Assembly: GCF_003704095.1 (NCBI RefSeq)
Contig: NW_020846644.1
Coordinates: 1-64,000, forward strand
Origin: Pocillopora damicornis
Taxonomy: Eukaryota
Reading direction: 5' to 3'
Length of the DNA: 64,000 nucleotides
Shown: piece after piece, positions 28,570-61,466 of the stretch
Layout: every line of letters begins with the position of its first letter
How positions within the stretch are numbered: the first letter of the stretch is position 1
Notes under the pieces: generated by a model
What the model saw: the letters and a program-made list of their open reading frames with translations, nothing else
The model's database searches: none
Told to the model about the DNA's origin: nothing
Translations under genes and position numbers: made by a program

Positions 28570-29400
28570 TTTCATTTAAGTGTTGATGATTTATATTTAT
28601 ATTCTCTTACCCCGTCAAATGACTGGTGACCAGTGGTTTCTACATTAACTTGTTCTGATACACTGCTTTGGTACAACCCCCAGGTGGAACTTTGCATGAG
28701 ATAGTGGTTTGTGAAATACCCCTCAAATCCTGCCTTTGTCATGATTTTCTCTACTACATTTCCTAACTAATTTTACTACAGTTCTCCTCTCAGTTTGGGT
28801 AAAGCACACAAATAAAATGTGTTATCACTAATTTCTTTAGGCATGTGAGACAAATACTACTTATACAGCTTGACTGAGGAACGTTCTGTATTAGTTAAAT
28901 TTTTACATGCATGAAAAACTTTCCTTTTGACACACAAATGGCACAAACCCCCATTGTTTGTTTTATTAATATCCTCCATGTACTGCAAGAATTCACACTC
29001 CAATTCATCATGTTCTAAAGATAACTGAGAGTTTTTGAACCTCACATTTCGGTGTTCCTGCCCAGCCTTCAAAGCAAACTGAATGCCAAAAACCCAAACC
29101 AAAGTATAGCAAAGAATCTCCCTGTTCTTACTACCTAAAAAACCATTTTCCCACAAAAAGTTTTCTTGGTCTTCAGTTATAAATTTTGCCTGATTGATAA
29201 CCACACCTACTCCTTGTGCAGCTTTCTCTTTAATTTGAAAATTCATGCAGAATTTAAACTTCAAAATGTACAACCTTTCTTGTTAATTTATATCGTTAAG
29301 TTATATTTTGGTTATATTGCACTTGTAAAAACATTTGAATGCAAATTTGCACTCAAAGGAGGATATCAGTCTTCTAAACCTCTGCTCTCCTAAAGAAAGA
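28570..29400 (-). pseudogene. DUF3504 / Crypton-type tyrosine-recombinase-like transposase pseudogene
   Basis: ITEDQENFLWENGFLG..LCYTLVWVFGIQFALKAGQEHRNV, FEGYFTNH, TGHQS, with stops and frameshifts. Confidence 0.75.
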
Positions 29401-30141: not shown

Positions 30142-31222
30142 ATGAAAATGCTCTACACATCTTTGACACAGCTTCATTTCCAAGACAACCAGAGAATAAA
30201 GCATGATATTTGTAACCTGGAGTTCTCCATCCCTTTTCAATCAATTTTAAAACATCTAGACAAAAAAGCCACAACCTCAGACAAACTAGCTTGTGTCTAT
30301 ATATATGGTGAGCCAGGTTGTGGACGTTCATCAGTCTTGCTGGATATCTGTGAAAAATCTATTCAACGCAAATTGTTAGCATCAAAGGTGTGTGGTTTAA
30401 GAGTCAGAAAAGGATGTACTCTAGAGTCCCTCTGGAATTTGCTGAGTGAAATCGCAAAGGAAAGAAAGGACCGAGAGACAGCATCTACACTAACAAACTC
30501 AAAAGTCAAGTTGAGCAAAAAATACAAAGTTGCCCAAGCTTTCATTTCAGCAAACTTCCAGTTGATTTGTGTGGATGATGCAAGTGCTGATGGTGGGATT
30601 GTTTGGTCTCATCTTTCAAAGCTGTTGAACAAAACTAATATTGGTGTTGCTCTTGTTTCCAGTGAGCAAGAATGCAACTTTCCTTTCAAAGAAGAAATAA
30701 AGGATTGGCAATTACTCTCTGTGAAGGTCAAAGGTCTTAATGTGCAGTCATTTACACTGAATGTCAGAGAGTTGTATTCTTCTCTGAAGTTAAATGAAGA
30801 AATGATCTCTAAGATACATTGCATATTGAATGGCAATCCTAGAGCAGTCGATATTTTGATTAATGTTTTCAGGGAATATAACCTTCCAGATAAAAGTTTG
30901 CATTGTGTTTTTTTGTCCTTGGAAAATGACGGCATGGTGCACGAAATTGGAAAAGATGATCTCAATCCCATTTTATTGGTCCTTCAGTTTGTATTTGAAC
31001 ACCTAACTGCTTTTGAAAAAAGAGTTTACAGCCAGCTCTGCCACCTGCGAGAACCTCTTCCAGTTATTCATCTTTCAAAGGAAGCAGAGAAGCTTATAAG
31101 GCTTGGGTTGGTAACTAATCAAGCCAGTAGCCTATGTAGCAGCAAACAAGCGATTAATTTAGCATCCATATCAGTGGCTCAATGCTTTCAGCTGAGTGCA
31201 GCACAACTTCTTGATTTCTCAG
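30142..31222 (+). CDS. STAND/NB-ARC-like NTPase-encoding segment (360 codons) of the ALPK1-like gene
   Basis: VYIYGEPGCGRSS (Walker A-like), LICVDD (Walker B), ALVSS (sensor-1 position), LNGNPRAV (GxP), and a winged-helix-like FEHLTAFEKRVYSQLC..LIRLGLV. Confidence 0.75.
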
Positions 31223-34200
31223 GTAATTTAGTGTTAACAACCGAGTTGAAAACGTAAATTAGCCACCGTAAAGNNNNNNNNNNNNNNNNNNNNNNNNNNN
31301 NNNNNNNNNNNNNNNNNNNNNNNNNNNNNNNNNNNNNNNNNNNNNNNNNNNNNNNNNNNNNNNNNNNNNNNNNTGAAATGTAAGAGTAAATGGAATGCGG
31401 TCAGTGTTATCCTTCTCAGCCGTTTGTTTCATCATTTGAAACTTGAACTTGATTTTTGAAACTTGGAACTTGATTTCTCAGCTGAAGATGAAGCACCAAG
31501 CACCTTTGAATTGTGGTATGCTCTCTTGTCAAGTAAACTTCAGACACTCATTGCTGATGCAGAGAGGAATGCATGGCCTTTTGTCCCTGAGAAATGGTAA
31601 GTTGATTGATAAAAATTCTAATCTTTGTTGTTTTCGAAAATTCTGGTCGTGTCCACCATTTCTTGTCCAAATGGGGTTTAGTCTCTCAAGGAGCTGTTTT
31701 AGGTGTTGCTTCAAAATTTAAGGGAAACGACTACTATATAAGGCAATGATTGTGTCCCTGCACAACCTTAAGATTAATATTGATCTTCCCTGGTTGTTTT
31801 GGACTTGAAAAACATTAAACACTGGCAGATAATCCACACTTTTTCCCCAAAATTGTTCGTAAAAAAATAAGGGTTGTGGCTTATCTGCAATGCATCCAGA
31901 AAAAGTGCAGAAAATATTCATAAGTTAACACCATTCATCAAAAATTTCTACTTGTAAGTCTGTCTAGCAAATTTTAAAACCAGAATTTCATAAAGGTATA
32001 CCAGGGTACACACTGATCATTGCTTATGCAAGGTTGGAGGCTCCTCGAAGAGCCATTTGTGTTCATGAGCATTAATGTGGTGGCCAACACAAGCGAAGCA
32101 AATTTTCAACGACAACTATGACTTTTACAAATGAAGAAACACTATGAAGCGAAGATATATTTTACGGACAAGCCTTGAATCGTTTTATTTAACGTAGTCA
32201 AAGTATTCAAGGACTTATCGTAAACTGAAATATGAAATTATATGGAAGAAGCTAAGCTAAATTCTAATATACGAACCAACATTCCAATTATTCCGATATA
32301 AAGGCTAGATCCAAAAACTAGCTAAAACTCAAAAAGAAACTCACGAAAAGACTATCTTGAAAGAATAAAGGAGAACCGCTTGAAAACGAACTCTAACAAA
32401 AACTAATAACTAAATGGGAAAAACGTGTAGTGCTCTAACGAAACGTGAACAACGTAAGCCACGTGTTACGAGGTTGCGAAAACGAGCGATAAAGAAACTA
32501 GTGTAAAAACTAGGAAAAACTACCAAAAGACTAGATATATAGGCAAGCACAAGGAAAGGAACATAGGCACTTACATAATAGTCCCGCTTGTAAGAGTTTA
32601 ACCAAAACGAACTTCAGGTTAAGGTGGGCAAAAGGCGCTCTTCCGATAAACACGTCTTATCGTTAGCCCAAAGCAAGACAACTAACTAAAATGCGGTTCT
32701 GGGTGGAACTTAAAGATCACGTCCCTAATGGACAAACAGTAATGTCATTATTGCGGTTTAACACATTTAACACGAAACAAGCTTACTGTGAATCAATGCC
32801 CGGTGGCAAAGGCGTGGTAGCCGTTATAATTAGTTTATATTTATTGCTGACTGTTGAGTAGTGTTAAACTTTCTTCACCGACTTAAGAGACCTTTTAACC
32901 AGTTTAATGTCGTCTTCCTTGAGCAGCTAATTATTACTCGGCAAGAAATCTCCAATACTTCACAAAGCAGTAAGTTTAAACTATCACTTCAAAAGTTTTA
33001 TTAATCCATTAGGTACCCCTTTCCTAACTAAATGCAAGACTACTATGCTACAGAAAAATTAAAGATTTCCTGTTTACTTAATGCTGATTGGCTGTGATAG
33101 AAGGCATTTTTCATTATTGGAAATTAGGTCTTCTGCTGACAGTCCTTTTCATACATTGCCCGCAGGGGTTCGATCCTGTATCTACACACTCCCACTGCTT
33201 TAGCTGTGAACCCTCATGAATAGCCTGATCCTTTTAACATTGAAAGCTTAGTATTGGCAATTTACCTTAACACGAATGTGCTATCTGTCCAAAAGTAAGA
33301 ATTGCCAGATAATACGTATAATCCATGATGGATTATTTGATTCAGTCTTGTGGCTACTCATACCCCAGACAACTCCAATTGGGGAATGCTGACAGATTTC
33401 TGCGGCATTTGTTAGAAATTATTGATTAGAAATGAACAGCCAATGTCTCTACTACCGCTCGTCCTTTCTGAGACAAGTTGAATGAGGTGTGTGACCTGTT
33501 TGATGCAGCATGACCAAACTTCTTTGGTTCCAAACAAAGATTAATGCCAAATTTTCATACATTAGGTAGCTTCCCCAACCAGGCTTCCAAGCGCTTTAGA
33601 TCTTCCCTTGGAATTTGATGTACGCGCTGTATAAGTTTATATAAATCTAACATAGTGAAAAGTAACAAAAAATACACTCTTGAATGAGATAAATATACTA
33701 AAAATTCTCATTGTTCACGCACTTAAGAGGCTCAGTATATAAAGCTAAAATCTATTCTGTCAACTATTATATCACTGTATTTATTGGTTACACGAAAATC
33801 TCTTTACAGTTTCACAGTTCTGTGAAATAACCCATTTCTAGGAATGTTCAAGTGTTAACCTTGTTACTTTCGGCCCAAATTACATGTTCAGTTATTTATC
33901 TTGGTCTAAGTATGCACAAGACTGTGGCGCTATAATCAAAATTACAGTCTATGCTTAGTTCTTCTACTTACTTCTTGGCATCTTTAAATATGGATCTTAA
34001 TTGACTTTGTTCTTTTTTCAGCTGGTATGACTTTACGAGTTTGATGTGTTGGTCTTTAGAATTGTTGATGTAGGGGGCTATTTTCAACTTGGTGTTCTTG
34101 TATAACTTTTCTAATTCGACTCATCATTTCCCTCCTTTTTTCTGGCTGTAAGTAAAGTAATGGTGTTAATTTATACTTGTGTTTTTTGCTACAGTCACTG

Positions 34201-37200
34201 ATAACTTTCCTTGTTAGTCAGTCGAGTTCTTTGAGGAGATTGAGGCGCCAGTTGGTGGTCCACATACAGTACTGTTAGACAGGTACAGTATAAACATTAG
34301 TGGCACGGACTTTACGTGGTATTGACAATGGAGAAGTCCAAACTGCCCAAAGTCGATTCTTTCACTCCTTGGAAGCTTCTTCAATAACTTTATTCTCTAG
34401 ATGCCGAGTGTTCTAGTACTTTCCTAGGAATTTATAATGATCTTCATTGCCTATAAGGGGATAAAGCAGTTGTTACTTACAGGCATTTCAGTGGAGTTGT
34501 CGTTGATTGCTAGTGTTCCTTGCTTCATATGCGTTGCAGCACACTTGTTGATTCCCCATTCTAAACCAAAGTCTGCAAACATCTTCTTCAGCTTGCTTAT
34601 CACAGTTACTGCCTTTTGTTCAGATTGATGGCAAGTTTTCAAGTAATCAACAAAAAGGGCATAGGTGATTTTTCTGTGTGGGGCATGTGATAGTTGTTAT
34701 CCTTTGGTACTCCCAAGTTACCATGCAATTGGTTAAGTGATGGAGTAAAAAGTCGCACACAGAAAGACTTTGAAGGGGCCAATGGTTTCTTTGCCTTGAT
34801 GGATGAGGTCTGCATTTATGCCGTGCATTTCAAGAGTTTTGGCGATCCACTGGTGCGGGACAGAGTCGAATGCATTTTTCACGTCTACCCAGGAACAGGG
34901 TAGGTTCTTCTTGTGAAAGTGGGCGTCTCCTTATATCATCTTATCAATTAGCAGGTTGTCTACGGTGCCCATTGATTTTATTTTGCCTCCTCTTTGATCA
35001 ATTTGCATTAGATTGTACTTGTCCTCGTGCACTGGTAGTTGGTGGTCAATCACTGACGTGATGAGCCTATATAGGGTGTTTAAACAGTTTATTGGTCAAT
35101 GGTCAGAAGCGGATGGGTCGTCTCTCTTCCGAATCATAACACTTCTTCCTATCATAAGCCAAGCTGGTATCTCTAGTCTCTCAGTAAGTATGGTGTTCAG
35201 AGCTGTTGTGATGTCTCCATCAATGGTATCCATTTCCTTTATCCAATAGTTAGTGATTTTGTCTTTACCTGGCAAAGACCAGTTTATCTTGTTTTTAATG
35301 CTGTTGGTGATCATTTCTTTCGTCATCTTCATTAGATCACTTAGGTGTTTAATGTGTTTTTTAAGGGCTGTTTCAGTATCCTTTATCCAATCTGCTTCAA
35401 TAGGTACTTCGCTTGCACTCTCCCATATTGGTCTCCAGAATACTTTAAATTCTTCTGTTATTGTTGTTGCTGCAGTGGGGGTGGTTTCTTGAGTAGCAGA
35501 AGATGGCTTTTCTTTACCTATATATTGTGGCTGTTAGTTTGTTTCCAATGATTTGACGATGTTATTTAAATGGCTGTAGAACGAACTTTCATCTACATCA
35601 AACCACTGGTTGGTCTTGAATCTCTCATAGGCTGTCTTCTATCTTTTCTTCTGTCTTTTCAGGGCTCTGATGGTGTTAATCTTTCTTTTCTTTAAATCTG
35701 TCAAATTTGCGATGGTTATTCTTCCTTAAATGTCTTAAATTATTTAGGATCTGTTTTTCTTCATTCTCGACGTTAGTTGATGATTATTGCGTATTCTCTT
35801 TAATTCTTTGCATATCTGAGAAATTTGTTTTTGAAGATTGTTAATTTTTCTCTCTATGTTAATCATCCATCGCGGTTTCCCGCTAGTTTTGGTGTGTTTA
35901 CATCCTGCTTATTCAGTCTCAGTATCTTTCACAATGCCATCGTAGATACACATGGCTGCTTGCGTTATTTGTGAAATTCAATTAAGATCTTCAACTGTCC
36001 AGTCACTGCTTTGTTGTTGTTCACTTGTTTGATCTTCGATTTCTGTCTCTTTATTGTTTGGTCTTTGTTTCCTGGTTTCTCTTTGTTCTTGTAGCTCATT
36101 TGTTATGCGTAGTGCACATACCTTTCAAGTTTTATTTAGATGTGTTAATTTTTCCCTTAAAAATTTGTGCTGTTTTTCCAAGATTTGTATCCCTTCTCGT
36201 TCCAAAACTTTAACGTTGACAGCATGATTCCATTCTTTCTTCCTTTTTCATTAGTAGGTCATTCTTTCGATGTGTGTTGTTGTCTAGCTTTATCTTTACA
36301 TGTTAATAAATCAATGCACATTTGCTCCGTCCATCTTGTCCAACCATGTTGGATTCTTTCCGCACTCACTTTGCAAAGAATTGTATTTCTTGAGTCACTT
36401 TGAGCGGGCGATAGGTTGTAGTTGATGTTAACTGTCATTAAGATGGAATAAATTTCCAAAAAACACATTTCAAGAGTGTTTTAGAACAAATTTTTACGGA
36501 GCGCGAAGACTGTGGTGTTTATTTTTGTTATCATTATTACTATTATTATTGTTTAGTTTTAAGCCCTTTTTTGATGCTCTTTCCAGAAATTACTGCAATC
36601 GTTCATCATGTGTTGCTTCATCTTCCGTGCCGATTACGTCATCCATTATGACCTCAACACCATCCAGGTCTTCAATCATCTGGGCCATGGTTCTTTGGAA
36701 GATTTCCGGGGCACACTTTACGCCGAAGGGCAGCCTTGTGAACCTGTAACGACCAATTGGAGTGTTAAAGGTGCATAGAGGCGAGGACTCTACATCTAAC
36801 TTTAACTGCCAGAAGCCACTTTTGGCATCTAGGATGCTGAAAGTATGAGCACATTGAAGACGGCTAGCAACTTCATCAACAGTTTTCATAAGGTAGTGAG
36901 ACCTCTTCATGGCAGCATTTAAATCTCTAGGATCAATGCACAATCTCACTGAACCATTGGACTTCTAAACTACTACTAGTGAGTTCACCCACTCTGTCGG
37001 TTCCTCTTGGCGCACAATAACTCCGAGCTTTTTCATCCTTTTCAGTTCTTCAACAACTTTCTCTCACTGAGGTACTGGTATCTTCTTTGGGGAATGTACA
37101 ACAGGGGCAGCACTATCAGCCAGTTCAATGCGATATGTCCCAGGCAAGCATCCTAATCCTTTGAACAACTCTGGATAGTCATCTAACTCCACCGTTCTTG

Positions 37201-40200
37201 CAGGTGGTGTGTCGCTGGTCAGCTGGTGAACTCTCTTTAGTAGGCCAAGTTTGACACAGATGTTTCCACTAAGCACTAATTCCACTTCGGGTTCTACAAC
37301 AAAGAACTTGACCTCTTCGACATTATCTTTGTATTTTTCGCTTCAACACCACTTCTGCGCAAGGTGTTAGTCTGTGCTTTGAGAGGGAAATCAACATAGT
37401 GTTCGTCTTTGTCAGCGGTGGTCTTCGCCTGTGATTGTCTTAGATCTTCGGTGACATAGCAATAGCCTTTGCACCAGTATCTAGCTGGAAGCGAACTTCA
37501 GTATCTTCCACTAAAATAACTTCATAAAACTGCTCGTCTTCTGGAACACGGCTTGACTTAACTGAGTAAACAAACAGCTAGTCATCTTCGCTCTCTTCTT
37601 GGTCGGAGTCCCCTTCTGTTTCCTGGTCGGAGTCGGCTACTACTGAATGGACCTCCTTGGATAAACAGAGTTTTGAGAAATGATTCATCTTTTTGCAGTG
37701 TCTATACTGTTACCCCATTGCGGGACATTTCTTGTGGGCTTTGTCATAACCACACCGTCCGCATTTGTATTTCGATTCGACCTCCTCCGCTTCGGCGGTC
37801 TTCTCGGTTTTCCTTTTGCTTTTATTTGAACGCTTCTGACGATTCCAGGGCGGACGGTTGGGTCTTCGTCACTGGCGAGCTTTTTTAGAATGCTGAGATT
37901 TGTTTCGTAATTTCGACTGATTTCGATGGCCTTTTCACATGTCTGCTTGATCCATGCATTTCTCACGCACTTTGGAATGTTTACAACGAAAAACGATCGC
38001 GTCTCGAACCATACGTTCTTCCTCTTGATAGCCACAATCCTTAACTAGAATTTTCAGATCTGTAACAAACGAGTCGAAGCCTTCATTGTCTCCCTGGCGT
38101 CTTTCGTTAAATTTCAAAGCAGCCATTATGTGGTTTTTGCGTGGCGCACAATATTCTTCGAATCTCTTCAGTACGACCTTCAATTTCGCGGCATCTTCGG
38201 GTTTTGCGAATGTGAATCCTTCGAATACATCCAACCCTTTATCGCCTACCCACAACTTCAGGTAGCTCACGTGCTCGTTCTCTTCTTTCTTGTGCAACGG
38301 GCCGTCAAGAATGCGTTGTGCTTGTCGGCTGAAACGGCGCCATTCTTGATGCTATTCTTGAGCGGTCCACGATATCTCCGGAGGTTTGAATTTCGCCATT
38401 GTGGCTGTTTTCACAATCTCCGGGAATTCTGTGTTCTATTTCCAGTCAGCTGTTAGCTTGATAGCTTGTTTTTCGGCGTGGAAAAGAATCTCTTCCTGAC
38501 ACCATGTATTAACACTCATTAAAAGATGGCTGACAACTCTAAGTCATTGTTCCATGTGCTCAGTCACGTGAGATACATTGTGACTGACTAGGGGGGGGGG
38601 GAAAGTAAACCTGTTACATTTTATATCACACAAGCCTGCTGCTTTGGACACTCAACTACCTTCTCACTACAGGGTACCCACCCTCATGCTGAGCAGTGGC
38701 AGGGCATGAACATAACTGCATTTCAGTAATCCTTATGTGGGCCAAGACCCAAGCAAGAGAGAAGAAATACTCAGAGAGAACCATCATAAAGCTGAATAAC
38801 TGAAAACTTGGCTAGTGAAAATATCCAACTTCCCCTATTTTTGCCAATTTTATAATCTCATTTACTGGGAAAGCAAAATCTTATTGAGCTATCCCATTCT
38901 TACAGGTACCAGCTATCCTAAAACAATAACATCTATCTTTAACCCTTTCACTCCCAAGATTTGATTGTGAATTCTCCCCTCTTGCTGCTACACAATTCAT
39001 GTAAATTAGTTACAAGAATGTGGTGTGATGGTCACGTGATTAAAGTACTCAGGGGGCTGGGGTGGGTTAGCTGTCTACCCCTTACACAAGCCATGAAGCA
39101 ATTCATAGAAAGAACCACTCAAATAAAACTAAGAATAATCTTTCAAATTAAATTAAGTCCATGTTTATCTCCCTCAATCAATATTATTAGTTATTAGCAG
39201 AGCTTTGTACCTAATATTTTTACACAAACACCAGACAAAGTTCCCCAATGTGTACCCAACAAAGGCTCATGCTTGAAGAATAAGCTTGTGCACATTCAAC
39301 ATGGTTAAAACTCCCTCGTTTATTGAGGTACAGTTTCTTTTAAATGCTCCAATGTAAGCATTTCTAGTGAACCACTATTTGAAATGTTATTCAATGTAAA
39401 TTTTTCTTACAGGCAATACTCTTCCAGTGTTGGACCAGAAGAGAGGTACAATATTAAGGATCTACTTACAGCTAAGAATTCTACTGCTCCGCTCTTAAAT
39501 GAACTTGACATTATGGAGGTGGGTATTTTGTAAATTTTTTAACCCTGTTATAGAACCATAAAACTTTACACAAGTCTACCTTCACCCTGAAAGAGACTCA
39601 ATTTTGTTGCAGTGTCAAATACATTGAACTGTTTATATTCCAGCCGTATGTTTTATGATCAAATGCAGTCAGTTAAAATGGTTCATATATAACAACAACT
39701 TGTAGAAAGTTGTTCAGAGTTATTTTGCATTATTTTATTTTTAATAGTCTTTTAACAAAACCCTGGATTACTATATTAATGAGGATTTCAATGCTTTCTG
39801 TCAATTGTTTCAAGGATGATGTCAAGTATTTAAAATCTATTTACAAGGATGTACTTACCAGGAAAATAGTAGTCACCCAAATCACATTTACTACATTGTA
39901 GTAGAGGTCACACTCATGACTACAATCTCAAGATGACCAGTAATACTCTGGCGTGTAGCAACTGGAACATGTGCTGTATGAAGTGTTGTGGCTCATTTAT
40001 TGCCTTAAATTAAGAATGCAGTGTGTAAATGCTAAAAGTAGTAGTATATACATATAACATTGTTAAATAGGGTAAATATTCGAAGGTTGTATTTTATTTC
40101 TGTAAGTCAGGTTTTTCAATTGCAATAGAGAATAACAAACAATTTATTATTATTATTATTATTTTTATTATAATTACTCAAGATTTTGTAGAGTACTTTG

Positions 40201-43200
40201 TGCTGGACTTTGGCAAGGTTTTATTTTGGTGGTGGCAGAAGATGGTGGATCAGGCAAACTATTGTATCATTTGGTGTGCTTGTCAACAGCGGAAAGACAT
40301 TGGTTACTCCAGATTTTGGTGGATTTGTAACATTTTACATGAAGAGAGAAGCACATAATTCAAGTTAAGAGTAAAAAGAGAAAGAGCATTTAATTTGCAC
40401 TTGAAAGGAGAAGAGGTTTGAAACAATACATTGAAGCAAGCTCTACAATTACAGGTTGCCAGAATTGACATTCCAAAAGTTGATCTCATATTTGCATATT
40501 GATGAAGTCAAGCTATAACTATGATGTTAAAGGATTATTTTGTCCCCAAAGTGAATTTCCCTTTGTGAGAAAATTGTGTATTGAACAATTCCACTAGATG
40601 ACTCTCCTCTGTCAAACTATGAATAACACTATATTAAATACAAAATAAATCACTTAGATGTACAAAAAGCTGTTATAGACAAGCTTACACATCACATCTT
40701 AGTGTACATCTATTGAATAACATACAAAATATTTTATCCTTCACTTGTATGGCGCGGCACCGGCTATTCATAAACCATAAGGAACAAAGAATGGTGGAGG
40801 AAAAATTAGCAGTGGTAGCAGTAGTGCTGGTGGACCCAGTCGAGACGTCTTCGTAGCTCCAATTATGCAATTTCAACGGCAAATTTGATTTGTGAACACA
40901 AGAAGCAAAGTAGTGGTCTGGTAACGGTGGTCATGGTGGGCTAGAATTGCTTGATGTTCTAACTAATTAAGGGGTTACTTGCAATGTTATGGGGTACCAG
41001 ACTCTGAGCTGTTAAAGTGAGTCTTACAAGTCTGTGAGACAACGGTTTGCATTTTTTGTTTACAGTTAATGTCAAGGGGCTGGTGAGGGTCAGCCAGTGG
41101 TTCTACACTTAACCAACATCTGATGCATGTGCTCGTCGTACTCCCCTCCTGACATCCCCTAACTAACAATACCATCAGCAGTCCCATTAGCAGCCAGATG
41201 GGGAACTGAGGGTGGATGGGTGGCTTGGTTCTTTATCGAGTGCAAATATCTATTAGCGACATTTGGCATCCACAAGGGAGAGAAAATAGGCACCAGCTAT
41301 TTGAGAGAAGCTCTAAGGGGGTTGGGATCATGGATGCTCTCAGGAAAAATCTTTGTATAGATCTGTAGCGTTGAGGCATTTTCACAGTTTACCATTTGGA
41401 TTTCCGTGGTACACCAAACTGCTGACTTAGGCGGTTGGTTTACTTTCTGTTATACCTTAAGATTCCATATCAGCCACCCCGTTTCATTATGTCGTCATGC
41501 TGACCCAGTGGTATGTATGGTTGAGCATGTACGACCGGGCGCACTTCTGAGTCACGTGCGTTTCAAATCGATCCTAAGTTTTCGTTGGTTTCGTGCGACC
41601 CTCTGCATTTTCCAAGGCCCAGCTGTTTCAGGTTTCTAATCCTTGAATGTCAATCTATAAAAATAAAATTATTTTTCTCCGACTTCTTTTAGTATGGCCC
41701 ACTGATAAGCAGGTGGCATTATTGTTTGAATTTGACCAATTCATTTCGCACATTTGGTGCATTCCAATTATTATTTGCGGTTTCGAATCCCACAGCTGTG
41801 TTCTCTTATGAAATGTGTTAGACGGCTTGAAGATCAGAAATGTCGACTTGTAACCAAAATCACCTTGTCTCCAAATTAAATGAACTGGACAAATACATAA
41901 ATCAAAGAACAAAAGAAAAACCCTAAGGGTAGCTTCCCAGTGCTCACTCCGCTTGTTATGTGACCGGAAGTGCTTTTAGATCACTTGGCTGGAAGTGAAC
42001 ATTACATGCAGCGTATTTTACTGCAAGCACGACAAAGCAATCACTTGGTTGCGATTTCGCCGTTTCCACGGAGATGGTCATAAGTCATGGGGATGGTCAT
42101 AAGCCATAGGATTGTTGTATTTAAGGAGGCCGTGAAAGCTTATCTGGAGCTGAGTTTGTGTTTATTTATCAACCCTTGCTTATATTATTTTTCTTTCTTC
42201 TCGCAGGAGTGCTTGTTTCATGCAATGAAAGAGAAGAGGTACCGAACTGTGGGAGCATTAGTGTTTGTTATGGACAGATTCACTTATTGGCAAGGAATGT
42301 CTAATAGGACTCTACAACTTGTTGAATATTTGAAGACCAATAGTCCTGACATACCCATTGCACCTCAGTTACTGATAAGAAATGTGAGAATTATGAAAAA
42401 CGCAGGAAACCTACAAGGTATCTGTAAGTTTATTTTTGGAAAGTTATTGTTGTGAAAATAGGCTACTTGTTGGTAAATTGAAATTCCCTATTTTAAGTTA
42501 CGGCCAGAAACACCTTACCTGATTTCGAATTAGCTTCCAAAAGGATTTGAGAAGATGTTTGGTAGTAGATCCTGTCTTTGGTAAAGAAAAAAAAGTTAGT
42601 AAACAGATAATAACCAAGCACCATTCCAATAAATTAATTGGGTATCAAGTGCAATGAGTAAAGGAAATCTTCGCATTTTCACTTTTCAAGCATCAGCCTC
42701 GTATTCGGTCAGTGATTTTCTGTTGCACCAACATTTTGATTTTAAGCGGCGTTTGTCTTGTCAAATAATACCACGCAGTGTTACCATAGGAGTAGCCCAA
42801 ATATTCCTTGATTCATACGGTAAGGCATTGCGTCCATCTGGCCGGAGTAAATATGGAGTAATACACCCCGAGTAATCAACAGTTTGTCCTTGTCCCTTTA
42901 GGTGCAGAGAAAGCTCTTGACGATCTCCTAGATCAGAAGGCACAAATCGGTAAATGGATTTACCAGACGGAACATGATCGTCAACTTGTGAGTGCAGTGT
43001 GCTTTCAAATCAAAGGTGATATTCAGTACAACCTGGGGCAATGGACGAGAGGGGCAAAGCATTTGATGGATTCCGTGGTTTTGTTCAGGTATGCCTGGAT
43101 TCACCCGTCAGAAAAGACTGATTTTAATCGCCATATGGATATCTAGAATCATGTCACGGGGAGCAGAGCGGAAAAAGAATCCTATTGTACCTTGAATATT

Positions 43201-46200
43201 CCTATCTTTATTTGTATGTAAGCACAGTTCACAGTGATTGCAAATTATCCTTTTGTGTTGAGTAAAAATCCCAAAATTGTCCAAAGTGAAAAAAAAAACT
43301 GAAATACCTTCTCGTTACCCAGTCAAATATAATTGGTTTTTGGTCTGTTTGAATGTGTTTTCATCAATAGACTTTAAATTTCTCTGTTTTCTTATTCCTT
43401 TCAATTAGCTCACTTCCAATTCCAGATACAAAAGGAATCTCCTCCAGCCTTGCTATTCTCGGTAACTGCCTTCAGCGAATGAGTGTAACTGAGTATCTTC
43501 CTGTTTGTCACATGTATGGTCTCACAGCCTCCCATCCATTGCTTCAAGCCTATTACTGCTCTTGCGAAGCTGCTAGAAGATCACAATACACGCCACTGTT
43601 TTATGCCAGACATAAGGTAAGTGTATTAAGTACCTTACAGTGCATCCGTTGAGTCAAGCGTTTGGTAGGAGTAATGAAAAGGTTCTTGTATATTCCATAG
43701 AAGAGATTATTTTGTGAACTGTTGTGATAGCTTTGAAGTATATTACAGCATTTTCTGATGAATCGAGTTAAATATTAGTCCAAACTTTCAGTGCCCAGGT
43801 GCGTCTTTCTACCCTTCGCCTCTTCCTTTTCTTTCTACTCAATGTCCGTGAAAACATTGAAGAGAAAAGTTGTAATCAAATATAATCAAGACCCGTTATT
43901 CCCAAATACCGAAGTTATAGCTAAGTTGAGGAAGAAATGAGCCTTGAGGAGGAAAGGGTTGGGACCCTTGGAAACTAGCGCGTGCCCATCATTGCTAAGA
44001 GTTGGGAGGCTGGTGGTGTCCGGTGCAAATCTATTTTCAGCTCACTCTTTAATCCGACATCGTTTTCCGTTTGCTCATAAAGAATTCGATTTATTTTTAT
44101 TCGTGGAAATGTTTACTTTGTTAAAAGTGCATAAGTATCATTACAAATGTATCGTATAAGCTCTAATATTTGTTTAAGTGTTACTATTTCTGTTTGTGTT
44201 AATTTCGGCGACGATACACATCCATTTTGGGTGAGTATCGCGTCAAGCCCCTGCTACCACGTGAATTGTTTTCTCTTTGCACATTTAATTCCTTTCAGGA
44301 AGAGGTTTGCACAAACAGGTGACTATGGTGAGAGTTATTTTGATAGATACTCTATTTTGTGTCCCATTTAGTGTCAGGCCGGGGAACGTTTGTTGCATTA
44401 CTCAAAAGTGATTCCATGTGGAGCTACAAGGAAAAACTGTCTGATTGTTTCCATTCAAGATTTCAAAGACAGCATTCAAGCTCACAAAGACCTGCAGTCG
44501 TTGAAAAGCCGAGAGGAGTTCTTTGTCTTTGTTTGTGCAGTTTATAAGCTTGGCCTTGCATACGAAGAGTTGTCATCAGAAACTGGTTGCACTGAACAAG
44601 GGAAAGAAATATTACGAATGTCGATGTCAATGTATGAACACTACTGCCACTTCAGCGGTATGATCATTTTGGATGACGGTATCGCCACGCTAATTGCTCA
44701 CTGTCTGGATTTTTTAGGGTTGCCTCAGTGGTGTGTAGATCCTCAAGATGACAGCAAAAAAGCCCTCTCCCTAACTGTTGACGAAAACCAGTGTGGAGAC
44801 TCGGGTAAGTCAGTTTTTGTGCATTCAAGGGTACTGAATGACTGCTCGATAGGTTCCGTGGAAAGAAGTATCCGAACCGATGATCTCGAAACTCTTTTGG
44901 AGGTGCGCCGCGGAGGACTTGTGGTCACGGATAGCTTGACGGCGAAAAATTCCAACAGCGCTCTTGCTAACCCAGGAGCAAGGCCACCAGTGACAAACTG
45001 CATTGATTCAACAGTTGATAGGAGTTGTAAAACAAGGGAAAGCAGTTCAACTAGAGATTCCCCAGAACCAGCCACTGATTTATCAGGTTACAGCTTTGAA
45101 GTGACTTTCGACACTGTAGATCCCTGTGTTATAATTCAACACCTGGAACAGGAGACGGTGGCAATCAGCAATGATAAGTTTCTAACTCAAACCATAAACA
45201 ATCCAAGGCATAAAGTTCAAGGTAACTAATCTACAGTTCACTAACCTATCTATGTTACATCTACCATGATACTAGTGTGTTTACCCGACTTAACCACGGG
45301 TTGAGATTTTAGCGTATTAAGAAATGGCTTATTGTTCCGGATCAACTTTTCCAAACAAAACTCTCGAGTAATTGGTAGTCCTGAGGGACTTTGGCCGAAG
45401 GGAGGCGGAAAAGCTCATAACTGATCGAGAAAATTATCGGAGTGACAATTTTTCTGCACTGGGGGAGTGGGTAGTGTAAATATGCACTAGTAAAATCAAT
45501 CTCCATCGGTGTACCCAGGGGTAGACTTGACCCTTGTTTAGCGCATCGAGCCAAAGGTTCGCAAATTCAAAAATAATTAAATTTATCCGTATTACAGTGA
45601 CTCATTTAAACCACCTCTCTCTATATGTAATTCAAGTCGCCTGGTTTTTACCAGTCAGTTTTGTCAACGTACAAATGTATTTTTTGGTCTTACTACTGGT
45701 GCTAAATACAATCGAAAGTGACGATTTTCTTTGGAGAGCCTCGAGGCGATTAAAGACCATGTTTCTGGCGCACAGCTGTTTTCAAACGAGGCGCTCATCA
45801 TTTTTAGAACCAACATGTTTACCTAACACAAGGATCCTTCTTTGTAAAAGCGCCGAATTCGTGTAACTATGTTGATGATACAAGATATACTGATCAAAGC
45901 AATGATTTCTAGTTTTTGCGAGAGCATGTATTTGAGTTATTTTCGTTTTCAATCAAACGCGTGGCAAGGTGAGGGTGTGATATTTTTTCTCTCACAAGTC
46001 TCACAATGAATAAGGTGCGAGTTTTTTTTATTTATCTTTTGCAAAAAAAAAAGCGGGTCCTGCTTAAAAGTAAGTCTCTCTCATTAAAAACTATCAGAGC
46101 TTTACAGCGAATTTTAACAATCTTTGTTAAAAGTAAGGAGCTGTCAACAGCTTCTCCAAATTTTCGTAGAGAGCAGGCGCTGGCGCACAGCTGTTTTCTA

Positions 46201-49200
46201 ATGAGGCTTACTTTCTGAAACCAACAAGTCTACCTTAGAAGAGTATTCTGTTTTACAAAAGCACAGAATTCTTGCAACGATGTTGATGACACAAGATGTA
46301 CTAATCGAGGAAATTATCTCTAGTTTTTGAGAGAACATCTATTTTGAGTTATTCACGTTTTCAATCAAACGCGCGGCAAGACGAGGGTGTGATATTTTAC
46401 TCACAAGTCTCACAATGGAGAAGAAGAAGAAGACCATATGCAGGCACTATGCGTATGCCACATAAAGTAAAGGATTATGAAATAGAAATATTACTCGCGT
46501 TACTACTCGTTAATTAGTAGTTGCCTTTTTGAGTGAGCTGGAGAGAGTTGTGAGAGATTTCCCTCGAAAGAAAAAGACTGTTTTTTCGAGGTTTTGAGAG
46601 TATATTCAATAATGGCCTCTGCGGGGTTGTGCCTCTTCGAGAGGGTCCTCTTTTCAGAATAGTGGTATGATGAATAACGTTGCGGTATAGTAACGTCCAA
46701 GGAAAACTGCCGTTTGGATGATGTGAAAGGTCTTTCTAGGTATCTAGGTATCAATATAGAACGATAAGATTTTTGAGATGATAGTAATGTAAGGGTATTT
46801 CCTGGAAAAGATAATTTATCGATGGGTACCTTACGGATGTGCGTTAGTGGGTTGAATCCTTCAGCGCAGCGTCCCCTTTATGTTTAAAAGAATGATGATT
46901 AAGGATTATAGTAATTTTTCTCTGGTCAAAAGTACTTGTTAACTGAGGGTTTTCTTTTTTTTTTTTTTCTTTTTTTTTTTTTTGTAGCTGCTATTGTTTG
47001 GAGATATGACTACCATCGGAGTGAATGGAAAGGGGAAAAGACGTTGGCATATGTTGGAGATTTACTCGAGTTGGAGGAAGGCAAAGAGGGAGCACAGAGA
47101 AATGCGTATATGGTTGAATTTGTTGATCAAGAAGATCCTTTGGCAGGGTAAGGTACTTCTTTCAGCATGTCTCGGTGAACTTGCAGTCGAATTTCAAACT
47201 GAAAGACACTTTTATTGTTTTTATTGTTGTTATTATCATAATTGTTATTATCAATACCATTTTCTTTAAGTTTATCACGATCTTTTTTATCCCAGTTGGA
47301 GGATGGAAATATTTTTCTAGTAACTTTTTTCCTCGAAGTTTGCAGCGACTATTTTTCTCAAGTTGCATCTTGTTACAGAGTCTGTTTGAGCTCAGACAGA
47401 GGCTTTGATTTTTTATTAATGAAAAACTGGACCATTGCCAGAAGTTTTGTTGGAAGTTACACACCTATTATTAAGTTAATACTGTGGATAAACTGGCTTC
47501 ACGAGGGCATCTTAAAGAACGATCACTACTAAAGTTCATTCAAGCAGTGTGAGCTAATCATGAATTTCAAGTTATGATTTTTTCTGCCATTAACTAAACA
47601 TATTGTCTGAGATTTGGTCGAAGATTTGTATGAGGCTGGATTGATTGGAATGTTATGGTATTGGCAACAACAAGAAAACTACCGGTTAGGGGTGCTTTAT
47701 TGATTGACCAAATTTATAAGATGCTATTTGACGGAGTAATATTGGTGAGTTGTTTCAACAATATACTGGTAATCTTATTTCAGGTATGTGGCGAAGTGTT
47801 ATAAGAAGCCCAGAGATATCAAACAGTATCAACAGGATATTATTTGTCAGATGACAGCTCGTCATTACGTCACACTGTTCAACCAACAGCTATATCTTGC
47901 AGGTGTGATACAGATACTCAATAATACTCTTGTGCGCAAATTTGAGTTTAATCAAATCTATAATGTATTCTCTTTTATGCGTTTTATACTTTCAACCCTG
48001 CGACACATTGCGCGATTTGCACTGCTGTTTAAGGAGGATGTCGCCATTTATGGGCTTACCAGACAAAAATGTTTTTGGTCCCCTATTGGAAATATGTCTA
48101 TCATTATAACAGTCACATGGTCATAAAATTACTTTTGGGTTCCGATTCGTTGACTTTTTTGGCGATTCATAAGGTTAGCGTAGAGAATAATGGGAATTGG
48201 TGTTGTATGCAGTTTCGGCGAAATTAACCGCGGAAATCTATTATTTGTATTACAAGAGACAAAAGCTTTTATTTGGCGTGAAGATATGGTCGATGCTTGA
48301 AAATGATGTACCCATCACGTTTAAAGCAAAACCCATTGTGCCCAATGGCTAATTTCAGGTCCATTGTCGAACAGGACATGGCGGATCATGGATCTAATTA
48401 TCCGCTGTCAAATCACTCAGGCCAGTGGAAGGACCTTAAGATTCTCGGGAAATAGAATTAACTGTTTTTTTCGAGACATGCTGATAGCTTTTGTTATTAT
48501 AGAGTTTAGATGTTGTTAATAGCTGTTAATAATAACCCGTCAAATGTTTTGACCCTTGTGCGATTGGTTGTAACGTGTCACATGACTGAATATGCCTTGG
48601 AAAATTTGGGGAATATCCGGGACAACTACTATATTCCCCAATTTTAATACCTCACTTCCTTTCAGAAGAATGTAACTTCGAAGGACTTAGGTGTTTCGTT
48701 CAGCTGGGGTTCATTGCGGCGCAAGACTAAGAAATGGAAGTAATGTACAACGCAGTTTGTCTTTCACAGAATAATTTCTTAGTAAACATAAACGCTGTAT
48801 GAACATTTGCCGTGGGTATAACTTTTAACTGAGTCGACCGTACATTTACAAAGTAAGCTTATCCTCGTGTTTAGAAACCAAAACCATTAATTAACGTTTA
48901 TATTCCTATCATTCCTAGCTTTGAATGTGGGCGATATTCAGTTCCTTCCTGTAGTGTTACTTCAACTTGTTGACGTGTATGGCTCCGTCAGTGGTGCCGT
49001 ATATAACGTGGAACCCTACATGGCAGGGGAATTCGTCAAACTCACCAACAACTTTGGCTTTGTAAGAAGAGAAGACGACATGTCCGACGTAGTGTTGGCA
49101 TTCAGTCACTTCACATACGAAGAATCAAACCAGCAAATGGTGATCGTCGACATTCAAGGTTGGACTCCAGATACTACTGACAAAGCAAAGTGCACATTTC

Positions 49201-49358
49201 TCACCGACCCTCAGATTCACTCGGTGCGATACCAGTGTTTTGGAACAGGGAATTTAAGTCAGCGTGGCATTGACAGTTTTTGGAAGGAGATGCATCCGCA
49301 TTGTAACGACATTTGTATCAAGTTAGGACTATCCAGGCCGAATATCACATCAAAATGA
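30142..49358 (+). CDS. ALPK1: ALPK1-like alpha-kinase with an N-terminal STAND/NB-ARC-like domain, about 1158 aa
   Basis: Segments 30142-31222, 31482-31596, 39413-39518, 42207-42417, 42902-43088, 43409-43616, 44372-45221, 46988-47147, 47784-47902, 48919-49358 (3477 nt, GT-AG, phases consistent, no stops). ALPK1 N-terminal signatures WPFVPEKWQY, VMDRF, PIAPQLLIRNVR, PDTKGISSSL, YTPLF. Kinase motifs GAQRNAY, YVAK, QMTARHYV, VEPYMAGEFVKLTNN, VDIQGW, LTDPQIHS, HPHCNDIC. The start codon is uncertain (acceptor at 30130). Confidence 0.9.
31223..31468 (-). mobile_element. Antisense Penelope-like insertion (spans the 100-N gap 31274-31373) with a 13-bp TSD
   Basis: 31223-31273 is the reverse complement of the PLE tail seen at about 1425-1465 and 18118-18160. 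TSD cttgatttctcag at 31210-31222 and 31469-31481. Confidence 0.8.
32076..32575 (-). mobile_element. Possible LTR (~500 bp)
   Basis: TGT...ACA termini, a minus-strand TATA-like motif and AATAAA, and a weak purine tract next to it. No partner LTR seen. Confidence 0.35.
33200..36500 (-). mobile_element. Decayed RLE-type (R4/NeSL-like) non-LTR retrotransposon
   Basis: NWSLPGKDKITNYWIK, IPAWLMIGRSVMI, PINCLNTLY, LFVDYLK (FxDD position), FGLEWGINKCA, YKFLG. Many stops. Ends are approximate. Confidence 0.8.
36555..38577 (-). mobile_element. Ty3/Gypsy LTR retrotransposon 5' half (gag-protease-RT pseudogene, PBS, short LTR)
   Basis: gag LKLWVGDKGLDV..FEEYCAPRKN, protease FQLDTGA, RT RLCIDPRDLN..LDAKSGFWQ..RLPFG..IMDD. 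PBS TGGTGTCAGGAAG at 38492-38504. Candidate LTR 38505-38577 with tgtat/ataca ends. Confidence 0.9.
45765..46416. repeat. Two diverged ~240-bp direct repeats
   Basis: ctggcgcacagctgtttt...gagggtgtgatatttt..ctcacaagtctcacaatg at about 45765-46008 and 46180-46417. Confidence 0.8.
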
Positions 49359-60900: not shown

Positions 60901-61309
60901 ATTCAACAAGACTCACCAATAATTCCATTTTGACTCTCACTTCATCCTGTAGCCAGTTTTTTTTCAGTGCATTGTATCGATGTCTCATGGCAACTTCTGT
61001 AGGGCACGAGTCATCAATATGAAATTTTTCCCAAGGATCGGGTAAACTTTTAACCTTTTTAAGAGCAATCTTCCAGCTTAAATGGTGCTGCTGTTTGTGA
61101 TGAGAAGCAGTTTGACCTTGAAGATCATCAGCACTGGCCTCTTTACTGTTTAGACGAATTTCTCTGTTAGGGAGCATTTCATCATCCTTCAGTAATCCAA
61201 CTTCACCATTCCAATCATCTGTTGTTTCTTGTTCTACATTTCCACATCTTCCAGACTCAGGGTCAGTTGTTCTTCCATTATCATTGGTTACACTTTCCAG
61301 GCTCTCCAT
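51980..61309 (-). CDS. EEF2K: Eukaryotic elongation factor 2 kinase, 669 aa
   Basis: 11 exons: 60917-61309, 60433-60470, 59318-59489, 57266-57418, 56144-56204, 55325-55442, 54614-54956, 54223-54360, 52814-52996, 52537-52661, 51980-52265 (2010 nt). CaM-binding WKIALKKVKSLPDPW, GAMRECFR, VRLQMDAKLWG, YIKYNSNSG, QAFSHFTFERSGHQLIVVDIQGVGDLYTDPQIH, SEL1-like repeats, C-terminal LAEEAW. Confidence 0.97.
55757..55897. repeat. Purine-rich (GA/GAA) low-complexity tract
   Basis: Almost entirely A/G, in an eEF2K intron. Confidence 0.9.
57060..57185. repeat. Pyrimidine-rich low-complexity tract
   Basis: (tcca)n and (ttcc)n runs in an eEF2K intron. Confidence 0.8.
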
Positions 61310-61466
61310 AGCAGACTACCCTCCTTCACTTTACTTAACCATCTTTGAAGAAATCACCATGCTTGACTTCTGGCACTATCAGCATTATATTTTCTGAGAA
61401 ATTTGCAAAACAGAAAGTGCTTGGATTGATCTTGTTCTTAAATTTCATGAAGTCAGTAATTCATTG

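What the first reader, a model, noticed from the sequence alone, without database searches (positions are those of the whole stretch)
31482..43616. ADP-heptose-binding pocket residues conserved in a non-vertebrate ALPK1
Aligned by eye to recalled human ALPK1: F61 and Q67 (WPFVPEKWQY), R116 (DRF), R150 and R153 (IRNVR), D231, K233 and S236 (PDTKGISS) and F295 (YTPLF) are all present. T237, the ROSAH T237M site, is Ser; Y254 is kept; S277 appears as Gln. Inference: cytosolic sensing of bacterial ADP-heptose or a related nucleotide-sugar may predate the cnidarian-bilaterian split. The T237S and S277Q differences could shift ligand range, since human disease variants map to those sites. No TIFA-like gene is in this window.
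Basis: partly seen in the sequence, partly recalled or inferred. Interest (0 to 1): 0.78.

Follow-up and report, generated by a model that had tools for sequence, protein, structure and literature searches.

The report
Coral ALPK1 keeps ADP-heptose pocket
A reef coral carries an expressed relative of the human bacterial-sugar sensor ALPK1 whose ligand pocket is almost unchanged, and which is fused to an Apaf-1-like switch module; so this kind of sensor is much older than vertebrates, although whether it binds the bacterial sugar is untested.

Summary
Confirmed. Window 31482-43616 holds exons 2-6 of a 10-exon, single-copy, expressed coral gene (30142-49358, + strand, 1158 codons). Taken exon by exon, HMMER aligns them collinearly to the ligand-binding domain of human ALPK1 (PDB 5Z2C), with no gaps around the pocket. 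F61, Q67, R116, R150, R153, D231, K233, S236, Y254 and F295 are identical. RNA contigs from four coral or marine studies confirm the splice joints, including EKW|QY. The pocket is invariant in four other coral genomes, except Ala at 237 in one (dN/dS 0.07-0.17). The best solved match of the last exon is the ALPK1 kinase domain.

New context:
- The protein begins with an Apaf-1-like NB-ARC NTPase module that bilaterian ALPK1 lacks.
- ALPK1-like proteins with the same pocket are already in databases for amphioxus, molluscs, an annelid, a nemertean and Nematostella, although a 2025 paper says invertebrates lack ALPK1.
- Ser at 237 and Glu/Gln at 277 are the usual invertebrate states.

No TIFA orthologue was recognisable. 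Ligand binding is untested.

The parts
30142..31222 (+). Exon 1: NB-ARC-type STAND NTPase module (360 codons + 1 nt). Walker A reads GEPGCGRS and Walker B reads LICVDD.
   Evidence: Pfam AAA_22 at 3.3e-5 and NB-ARC at 4.7e-4, below the cut-off in the window; NB-ARC is found in 12 of 16 orthologues, best 4.1e-9. The AF2 model (pLDDT 76.6) is closest to Apaf-1, CED-4 and NRC2 (Foldseek E 3e-9). The start Met is shared with the orthologous ORFs.
31223..31481 (+). Intron 1: an insertion that contains the 100-N gap and is flanked by an exact 13-nt duplication (31210-31222 and 31469-31481). Its ends are GT..AG.
   Evidence: Sequence read directly. In other coral genomes this stretch is absent and exons 1 and 2 form one open frame. 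The splice itself was not covered by the RNA lay.
31482..31596 (+). Exon 2: start of the ALPK1-type ligand-binding domain. It holds the F61 equivalent (31580-31582).
   Evidence: Aligns to 5Z2C_A residues 29-66, E 2.9e-5. The loose end of RNA contigs at 39412 reads the end of this exon.
39413..39518 (+). Exon 3: holds the Q67 equivalent (39414-39416).
   Evidence: RNA contigs of X1 and X6 cover 39412-39518, and the joint 39516>42205 (cut +2) is seen in X9. MAFFT column. 54% identical to the Nematostella fragment P0043.
42207..42417 (+). Exon 4: holds the R116, R150 and R153 equivalents.
   Evidence: Aligns to 5Z2C_A residues 106-162 without a gap, E 1.7e-7. Joint 42415>42900 in three runs. Invariant in 5 corals.
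42902..43088 (+). Exon 5: helices between the two halves of the pocket.
   Evidence: Aligns to 5Z2C_A residues 165-222 without a gap, E 2.9e-8. Joint 43086>43407 in four runs.
43409..43616 (+). Exon 6: holds the equivalents of D231, K233, S236, T237 (Ser), Y254, S277 (Gln) and F295.
   Evidence: Aligns to 5Z2C_A residues 225-297, E 1.3e-3. Joint 43614>44370 in three runs. Alignment of 5 corals.
44372..45221 (+). Exon 7: diverged C-terminal half of the ligand-binding domain, plus the linker.
   Evidence: No PDB hit, but 24-31% identical to the amphioxus, nemertean and mollusc ALPK1-like proteins. Covered by RNA contigs in four runs.
46988..47147 (+). Exon 8: start of the alpha-kinase domain.
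   Evidence: The RNA loose end behind 45221 reads the start of this exon with one synonymous difference. 42% identical to amphioxus ALPK1.
47784..47902 (+). Exon 9: alpha-kinase, with the VAK lysine.
   Evidence: Pfam Alpha_kinase 1.4e-4. 59-62% identical to annelid and amphioxus. The boundaries rest on GT..AG and frame closure, not on RNA.
48919..49358 (+). Exon 10: alpha-kinase catalytic core and stop codon. It carries the DIQGW, TDPQIH, GTGNL and H..C..C motifs.
   Evidence: Pfam Alpha_kinase 5e-34. The best solved match is the human ALPK1 kinase domain 8ZD3_B at 103.8 bits, against 66.7 for MHCK A.

Best explanation
The stretch is the ligand-binding part (exons 2-6) of a single-copy, expressed coral gene for a protein of about 1158 residues with three modules.
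- An N-terminal NB-ARC (Apaf-1/CED-4-like) NTPase.
- An ALPK1-type helical domain whose nucleotide-sugar pocket is intact.
- A C-terminal alpha-kinase that is closest to the ALPK1 kinase.

Shown here:
- Orthology of both ALPK1 domains.
- Identity of the pocket residues.
- Purifying selection.
- Expression and splicing.
- The NB-ARC fusion.

Inferred: the pocket binds an ADP-sugar, most likely bacterial ADP-heptose. Binding relieves inhibition of the kinase as in human ALPK1. The NB-ARC module adds nucleotide-dependent self-assembly, which may stand in for the TIFA polymer used by vertebrates.
For: - Collinear, in-register alignments of exons 2, 4, 5 and 6 to 5Z2C_A.
- Splice joints seen in RNA contigs of four studies.
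- All introns are GT..AG and the frame closes.
- Exon 6 occurs once in the 234-Mb genome.
- The pocket residues are invariant in 5 coral genomes, except Ser/Ala at 237, with dN/dS of 0.07-0.17 at dS of about 1.
- F61, R116, R150, R153, D231 and K233 are conserved in nearly all of 38 ALPK1 family proteins from molluscs to mammals.
- R153 and K233 make polar contacts with ADP-heptose and are needed for activation. T237 hydrogen-bonds a sugar hydroxyl, which Ser could still do (PMC10723048).
- The kinase exon is closest to human ALPK1, with the alpha-kinase motifs kept.
- NB-ARC fusion: in 14 of 16 homologous ORFs from other genomes the NTPase module runs on in one frame to ...WPFVPEKW. The fold matches Apaf-1 and CED-4.
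- The tree places corals outside vertebrates, in rough agreement with the species tree.
Against: - No binding or activity data exist for any invertebrate ALPK1.
- The C-terminal half of the ligand-binding domain (exon 7) has no detectable similarity to the human protein.
- No TIFA orthologue was recognised. There are 18 FHA matches in the genome, none on this contig. The only small FHA-only ORF family resembles generic FHA domains, not TIFA.
- The sites that tune sugar specificity in human disease (237, 277) differ, so the sugar could differ.
- The Walker A lysine of the NB-ARC module is Arg, so its NTPase cycle may be atypical.
- That F61, Q67, R116, R150, D231, S236 and F295 contact the ligand rests on recall of the 2018 structure paper. 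It was not checked against a text read here.
- The exon 1-exon 2 splice was not seen in RNA.
Confidence: 0.6

Rival explanations
1. Same protein, different ligand. The pocket keeps the ADP-binding residues but reads another nucleotide-sugar, or an ADP-ribose-type signal made by the host or its symbionts, rather than bacterial ADP-heptose.
For: - The invariant residues are the three arginines, the lysine, Asp231 and Phe61. Of these, the text read here describes only Arg153 and Lys233, as making polar contacts with ADP-heptose.
- Positions tied to sugar selectivity in human disease (237, 254, 277) vary across the family.
- Human T237M, Y254C and V1092A mutants respond to mammalian nucleotide sugars and ADP-ribose (PMC10723048), so small changes alter the ligand range.
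- One coral orthologue has Ala at 237.
Against: - Ser at 237 keeps the hydroxyl that bonds the sugar.
- D231 and S236 are kept.
- Vertebrate ALPK1s that have Ala or Ser at 237 are still annotated as ALPK1. There is no evidence of another ligand.
Confidence: 0.27
2. The conserved residues serve folding or the contact between the N-terminal domain and the kinase. The coral protein is an NB-ARC-regulated kinase that senses no small molecule.
For: Twenty-three other columns are equally conserved without being known ligand contacts. The NB-ARC module could be the real switch.
Against: A cluster of three Arg, one Lys and one Asp kept from corals to mammals is what a phosphate- and sugar-binding site looks like. 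In human ALPK1 those exact residues are needed for activation by ligand.
Confidence: 0.08
3. Artefact: vertebrate contamination, a pseudogene or a mis-assembly that joins two genes.
For: An assembly gap (31274-31373) lies between the NB-ARC exon and the first ALPK1 exon.
Against: - The gene is expressed and spliced in coral RNA from four studies.
- The frame is intact.
- Selection is purifying.
- Other coral genomes have the same gene order, with NB-ARC and exon 2 in one ORF and no gap.
- It is only 39% identical to mammalian ALPK1, and corals form their own clade.
Confidence: 0.02

Closest known systems
Human ALPK1 (alpha-protein kinase 1), the cytosolic receptor for bacterial ADP-heptose; structures 5Z2C, 8ZD3, 9J4P
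   Same: - The N-terminal helical ligand-binding domain is collinear over human residues 29-297.
- 10 of the 12 listed pocket and disease sites are identical.
- The C-terminal alpha-kinase is the closest solved relative (103.8 bits).
- The order is the same: ligand-binding domain, linker, kinase.
   Different: - The coral protein has about 360 extra N-terminal residues forming an NB-ARC NTPase.
- Its linker is much shorter (1158 against 1244 residues in all, despite the extra module).
- Residues 300-446 of the human domain have no detectable counterpart by sequence.
- Position 237 is Ser and 277 is Gln.
- No TIFA partner was found.
Automatically annotated 'alpha-protein kinase 1-like' proteins of invertebrates (Branchiostoma, Owenia, Octopus, Haliotis, Patella, Littorina, Lineus, Liolophura; partial Nematostella EDO40069)
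   Same: - Same two domains and same core pocket.
- Ser at 237 in most of them.
- Kinase exons 41-62% identical.
   Different: - The bilaterian ones begin directly with the ligand-binding domain (exon-4 homology at residues 74-160) and have no NB-ARC module.
- They have Glu, not Gln, at 277.
- None has been studied.
Apaf-1 / CED-4 / plant NRC NB-ARC STAND NTPases (NLR-type switches)
   Same: - The predicted fold of exon 1 matches NBD-HD1-WHD (Foldseek E 3e-9 to 1e-7).
- Pfam NB-ARC and NACHT hits occur in the orthologues.
- A helical sensor domain follows the NTPase, as in STAND proteins with TPR sensors.
   Different: - There is no N-terminal death-fold or TIR effector.
- The output is a C-terminal alpha-kinase.
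- Walker A has Arg in place of Lys.
- Sequence identity is only 13-15%.
TIFA, the FHA adaptor phosphorylated by vertebrate ALPK1
   Same: The coral genome has FHA domains, including a multi-copy small FHA-only ORF of about 173 residues.
   Different: - That ORF best matches bacterial GarA-type FHA domains, not TIFA.
- It has no N-terminal Thr before the FHA domain and no P-x-E TRAF6 motif.
- No orthologue was identified.

Membership tests
ALPK1 | N-terminal helical domain homologous to the ADP-heptose-binding domain (human residues 1-473) | tested here: met
   Exons 2, 4, 5 and 6 hit only ALPK1 chains in the PDB at E 2.9e-5, 1.7e-7, 2.9e-8 and 1.3e-3, collinear over residues 29-297. The C-terminal half (exon 7) matches only invertebrate ALPK1-like proteins.
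ALPK1 | Ligand-pocket residues, with R153 and K233 essential and T237 bonding the sugar | tested here: met
   F61, Q67, R116, R150, R153, D231, K233, S236 and F295 are identical, and T237 is replaced by Ser. The roles of R153, K233 and T237 come from PMC10723048. The roles of the others come from recall of the 2018 structure paper.
ALPK1 | C-terminal alpha-kinase domain of the ALPK1 type, with catalytic motifs | tested here: met
   Pfam Alpha_kinase 5e-34. The best PDB match is ALPK1 8ZD3_B at 103.8 bits, against 66.7 bits or less for other alpha-kinases. The D.QG, TDPQIH and H..C..C motifs are aligned.
ALPK1 | Binds ADP-heptose and is activated by it | not testable with these tools
This needs protein and ligand.
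ALPK1 | Signals by phosphorylating TIFA (FHA adaptor, Thr9, TRAF6 motif) | tested here: inconclusive
   The Pfam FHA search of the whole genome gave 18 matches. None is on this contig and none is recognisable as TIFA. No TIFA sequence was available for a direct search.
ALPK1 | Two-domain architecture with no other module | tested here: not met
   An NB-ARC module precedes the ligand-binding domain in corals. It is absent from the mammalian and amphioxus proteins.
STAND / NB-ARC NTPases (NLR-like) | NB-ARC domain: P-loop NTPase followed by helical and winged-helix subdomains | tested here: met
   In the window the Pfam NB-ARC score is 19.9 bits, below the 23.5 cut-off. However, 12 of 16 orthologues match, best 4.1e-9. 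The AF2 model has pTM 0.76, and its top Foldseek hits are Apaf-1, CED-4 and NRC2.
STAND / NB-ARC NTPases (NLR-like) | Canonical Walker A GxxxxGK[ST] | tested here: not met
   Walker A reads GEPGCGR[ST], with Arg for Lys, in the window and in 11 of the 14 orthologous ORFs from other genomes. The pattern search found no such motif in the other three.

The most novel reading that the evidence does not exclude
Corals (and probably other anthozoans) use a self-contained 'NOD-ALPK1'. ADP-heptose, or a related ADP-sugar, binds the conserved pocket. That licenses NB-ARC-driven oligomerisation, which brings the alpha-kinase domains together. Receptor, polymerising scaffold and kinase are thus one polypeptide, and no TIFA is needed. 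Either this is the ancestral layout, later split into ALPK1 plus TIFA in the vertebrate line, or it is an anthozoan invention that plugs a bacterial-metabolite sensor into NLR-type signalling.
Probability: 0.3. Interest if true: 0.85.

Novelty: new variant of a known kind. Interest (0 to 1): 0.68.

Why it matters
ALPK1 is the only known animal receptor for the bacterial metabolite ADP-heptose, and its mutations cause ROSAH syndrome and spiradenoma. A 2025 paper states that neither ALPK1 nor TIFA occurs in invertebrates (PMC12457700).

The sequence evidence here says otherwise for ALPK1. An intact pocket is present in corals, a sea anemone, molluscs, an annelid, a nemertean and amphioxus. That moves the origin of this sensor to before the cnidarian-bilaterian split.

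It also makes two questions directly testable:
- Do corals, whose cells house Gram-negative symbionts, sense ADP-heptose?
- What did the sensor signal through before TIFA existed?

The NB-ARC fusion offers a concrete answer to the second question. It would be a domain combination not found in the papers searched here, joining the NLR and alpha-kinase worlds.

The natural variation at 237, 254 and 277 across the family is a ready-made guide to which disease-site changes alter ligand range.

Tried and rejected
1. Exon 3 and exon 7 searched alone against the PDB gave no hit. Exon 3 is too short and exon 7 has diverged.
2. A word search with exon 7 returned only exon-sized unnamed ORFs. A word search with the Owenia protein found only four proteins and no full-length cnidarian model. 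No annotated full-length coral protein could therefore be used for folding.
3. The NB module searched against the PDB by sequence gave only a marginal RFC P-loop match. The fold search was needed.
4. TIFA. The small multi-copy FHA ORF was considered and rejected as a TIFA-like candidate.
5. Three long hits of the big search with many repeated matches (P0040, P0133, P0150) were considered as possible repeat relatives of the ALPK1 domain. Their Pfam hits are scattered fragments typical of low-complexity sequence, so they were dropped.
6. Homology of the vertebrate N-terminus (residues 1-28) to the end of the coral NB module was tested. BLAST finds similarity only from human residue 41 onward.
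7. Literature searches for functional work on ALPK1 in cnidarians, molluscs or amphioxus, or for NB-ARC plus alpha-kinase in Acropora, found nothing.
8. The N gap was not filled.


Full report
**What is there**

The window is eukaryotic DNA of about 38% G+C. Between 30142 and 49358 the + strand carries a 10-exon gene:
- exon 1: 30142-31222
- exon 2: 31482-31596
- exon 3: 39413-39518
- exon 4: 42207-42417
- exon 5: 42902-43088
- exon 6: 43409-43616
- exon 7: 44372-45221
- exon 8: 46988-47147
- exon 9: 47784-47902
- exon 10: 48919-49358

All nine introns are GT..AG. The exon lengths sum to 3477 nt including the stop, which is 1158 codons with the frame closed.

**Expression and host**

Thirteen of the 23 listed public runs that hold the stretch are on record as RNA, and most of those are labelled coral, marine or plain metagenome. 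I laid contigs of four runs from four studies on 39300-45299. They show these joints:
- 39516>42205
- 42415>42900
- 43086>43407
- 43614>44370

All are GT..AG with the cut two places to the right. A loose end before 39412 reads the last letters of exon 2, so the mRNA reads ...PEKW-QY.... A loose end behind 45221 reads the start of exon 8.

The exons are closer to a Nematostella fragment (53-71% identical) than to any bilaterian protein. A tree of the last exon puts the window with four other coral loci (support 99/98), outside a vertebrate clade (100/99). The host is a scleractinian coral. I could not name the species. The genome holds one copy of exon 6.

**Check of the observation**

The joined protein was never searched, folded or docked.

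phmmer against all PDB chains finds only human ALPK1 at significant E-values for exons 2, 4, 5 and 6. The matches are to residues 29-66, 106-162, 165-222 and 225-297. They are collinear, and the first three are ungapped across the sites in question.

Counting along the printed alignments gives:
- identical: F61, R116, R150, R153, D231, K233, S236, Y254, F295
- T237 replaced by Ser
- S277 replaced by Gln

Q67 is the first full codon of exon 3. MAFFT places it in the Q67 column of a 38-protein family alignment, numbered on marmot ALPK1, whose numbering equals the human one here.

Identity to the mammalian protein over these exons is 39%. Only 29 of 300 columns are at least 92% conserved in the family, and six of the listed residues are among them.

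**Conservation**

Four loci from other coral genome assemblies (L001-L004) have the same exons, 64-83% identical in protein. Every pocket residue is invariant, except that position 237 is Ser in four and Ala in one. dN/dS for exons 4-6 is 0.07-0.17 at dS near or above 1.

**The kinase**

Exon 10 matches Pfam Alpha_kinase at 5e-34. Its best solved relative is the human ALPK1 kinase domain at 103.8 bits, against 66.7 for myosin heavy chain kinase A. The D.QG, TDPQIH and zinc-site motifs are aligned.

Directly upstream, in the same orientation, a 360-codon open frame has a P-loop and weak Pfam NB-ARC and AAA_22 matches. In the window it is separated from exon 2 by 259 nt that contain the assembly gap. 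These 259 nt are flanked by an exact 13-nt duplication, begin with GT and end with AG. The insertion plus one copy of the duplication can therefore be spliced out exactly, leaving the frame intact.

In other coral genomes there is no insertion. In 14 of 16 homologous ORFs the NTPase module runs on in one frame to ...NAWPFVPEKW, the end of exon 2.

Evidence for the fold of this module:
- Twelve of 16 members match Pfam NB-ARC (best 4.1e-9) and nine match NACHT.
- An AlphaFold model built on 16 sequences (pLDDT 76.6, pTM 0.76) is closest to Apaf-1, CED-4 and the plant NRC2 NB-ARC (Foldseek E 3e-9 to 1e-7).

Walker A reads GEPGCGR[ST], with Arg where Lys is expected. Mammalian and amphioxus ALPK1 share nothing with this module. 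Similarity starts about 26 residues before the end of exon 2.

One RNA contig of 1234 nt ends in exon 3 and extends 1127 nt upstream of it. That is far more than the 115 nt of exon 2 and fits exon 1, but its letters were not available. The exon 1-exon 2 splice is therefore inferred, not seen.

**Distribution and novelty**

A profile of exon 4 from five corals was searched against 1.84 billion representative proteins and found 122 relatives.

Named invertebrate relatives:
- amphioxus ('ALPK1')
- the annelid Owenia
- Octopus
- a chiton
- Haliotis, Patella, Littorina, Batillaria, Nucella, Babylonia, Pomacea
- the nemertean Lineus
- a partial Nematostella protein

Named vertebrate relatives run from hagfish and lamprey to mammals.

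The core pocket is kept in nearly all. Hagfish has lost D231 and K233, and a low-quality parrot model has lost R116 and R150. Position 237 is Ser in most invertebrates and in lamprey, and Ala or Val in some fishes. Position 277 is Glu in the other invertebrates and Gln in corals. Position 254 is Tyr or Phe.

In the literature, one 2025 paper states that neither TIFA nor ALPK1 is found in invertebrates (PMC12457700). An Acropora genome paper uses an 'alpha-protein kinase 1-like' orthogroup only as an example of gene duplication (PMC6389592). I found no functional or structural treatment of any invertebrate ALPK1, and nothing on NB-ARC plus alpha-kinase. The existence of invertebrate ALPK1-like genes is therefore recorded in databases but has not been taken up. 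The pocket analysis and the NB-ARC fusion appear to be new.

**TIFA**

A Pfam FHA search of the whole genome gave 18 matches, none on the window's contig. One family of at least five near-identical small ORFs (about 173 residues from the Met) contains only an FHA domain. Several things count against it being TIFA:
- Its best solved relatives are bacterial GarA-type FHA domains.
- TIFA does not appear among its matches at E up to 1.
- It has no Thr ahead of the FHA domain.
- It has no P-x-E TRAF6 motif.

I had no TIFA sequence by reference, so absence is not shown.

**Mechanism**

Established for human ALPK1:
- ADP-heptose binds the N-terminal domain.
- R153 and K233 make polar contacts and are required for activation.
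- T237 bonds a sugar hydroxyl.
- The N-terminal and kinase domains form a ligand-dependent complex (PMC10723048).

By homology, the coral pocket most likely binds an ADP-sugar and gates the kinase. Ser at 237 keeps the hydroxyl. The layout is NB-ARC NTPase, then helical sensor, then output domain, which is that of a STAND switch. I infer that ligand binding also licenses oligomerisation and brings the kinase domains together, which could replace the TIFA polymer. The ligand identity, the substrate and the role of the Arg in Walker A are open.

**Earlier notes of this scan**

Two sibling first-reader notes on this same window describe the NB-ARC fusion (s1-760909) and the insertion that became intron 1 (s1-760927). 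I confirmed the fusion independently. I also confirmed the duplication and the GT..AG ends of the insertion. I did not test whether the insertion is a Penelope element. Nothing was found on other DNA.

**Limits**

- There is no biochemical test.
- The contact roles of seven of the residues rest on recall of the 2018 structure paper.
- The boundaries of exons 8-10 are only partly covered by RNA.
- The spliced protein was not handled as one sequence.
- The N gap was left alone.

Noticed in passing
window 31210-31481: Intron 1 is an insertion flanked by an exact 13-nt target-site duplication (CTTGATTTCTCAG at 31210-22 and 31469-81). It starts with GT, ends with AG and contains the 100-N gap. Other corals lack it and have one continuous exon. 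Every same-species record found also carries the insertion (P0203, P0204).
   Followed up: partly
window 30300-30330 (Walker A) and orthologues P0205-P0215: The NB-ARC P-loop reads GEPGCGR[ST], with Arg in place of the canonical Lys. This holds in the window and in 11 of 14 orthologous ORFs from other genomes. It suggests an altered nucleotide cycle.
   Followed up: partly
window 39489-42415: RNA contigs of runs X1 and X6 cover the whole of intron 3. One 8.5-kb contig runs from 40181 through the intron into the spliced exons 4-7. This indicates either intron retention or an internal transcript start that would give a protein lacking the NB-ARC module, F61 and Q67. The spliced joint 39518>42207 was seen only in X9.
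   Followed up: no
window 44944 and 44631-44718: An in-frame 9-nt insertion (AAAAAGCCC) follows 44944 in three of four RNA runs; it is a linker polymorphism. A minor 86-nt GT..AG joint inside exon 7, seen in one run, would shift the frame.
   Followed up: no
window 34000-38500 (- strand), 60900-64000 (- strand), 28860-29282 (- strand): Retroelement remains. There is an RVT_1 fragment at 36590-36946 inside intron 2. RT-RNaseH and integrase zinc-binding domains lie at 62891-64000. A DUF3504 ORF lies just upstream of the gene.
   Followed up: partly
G000 contigs C3386, C4104, C4233, C2988 (loci L009-L012, L014): At least five near-identical copies of a small FHA-only ORF (about 173 residues from the Met, with a basic C-terminal patch). 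NHL-repeat-like sequence lies downstream in L009. It is not TIFA-like by sequence. It may be an expanded gene family or may ride on a repeat.
   Followed up: partly
P0132 (hagfish), P0145 (parrot, low-quality model): Among 38 ALPK1 family proteins, the hagfish one has Pro/His/Gln at 231/233/236, so it has probably lost ligand binding. The parrot model has Trp and Cys at 116 and 150.
   Followed up: no
locus of P0007 (ENA ERZ26168041, no DNA served): In one other assembly a second set of Alpha_kinase ORFs lies on the opposite strand about 7-8 kb downstream of the ALPK1-like gene. This may be a tail-to-tail paralogue.
   Followed up: no
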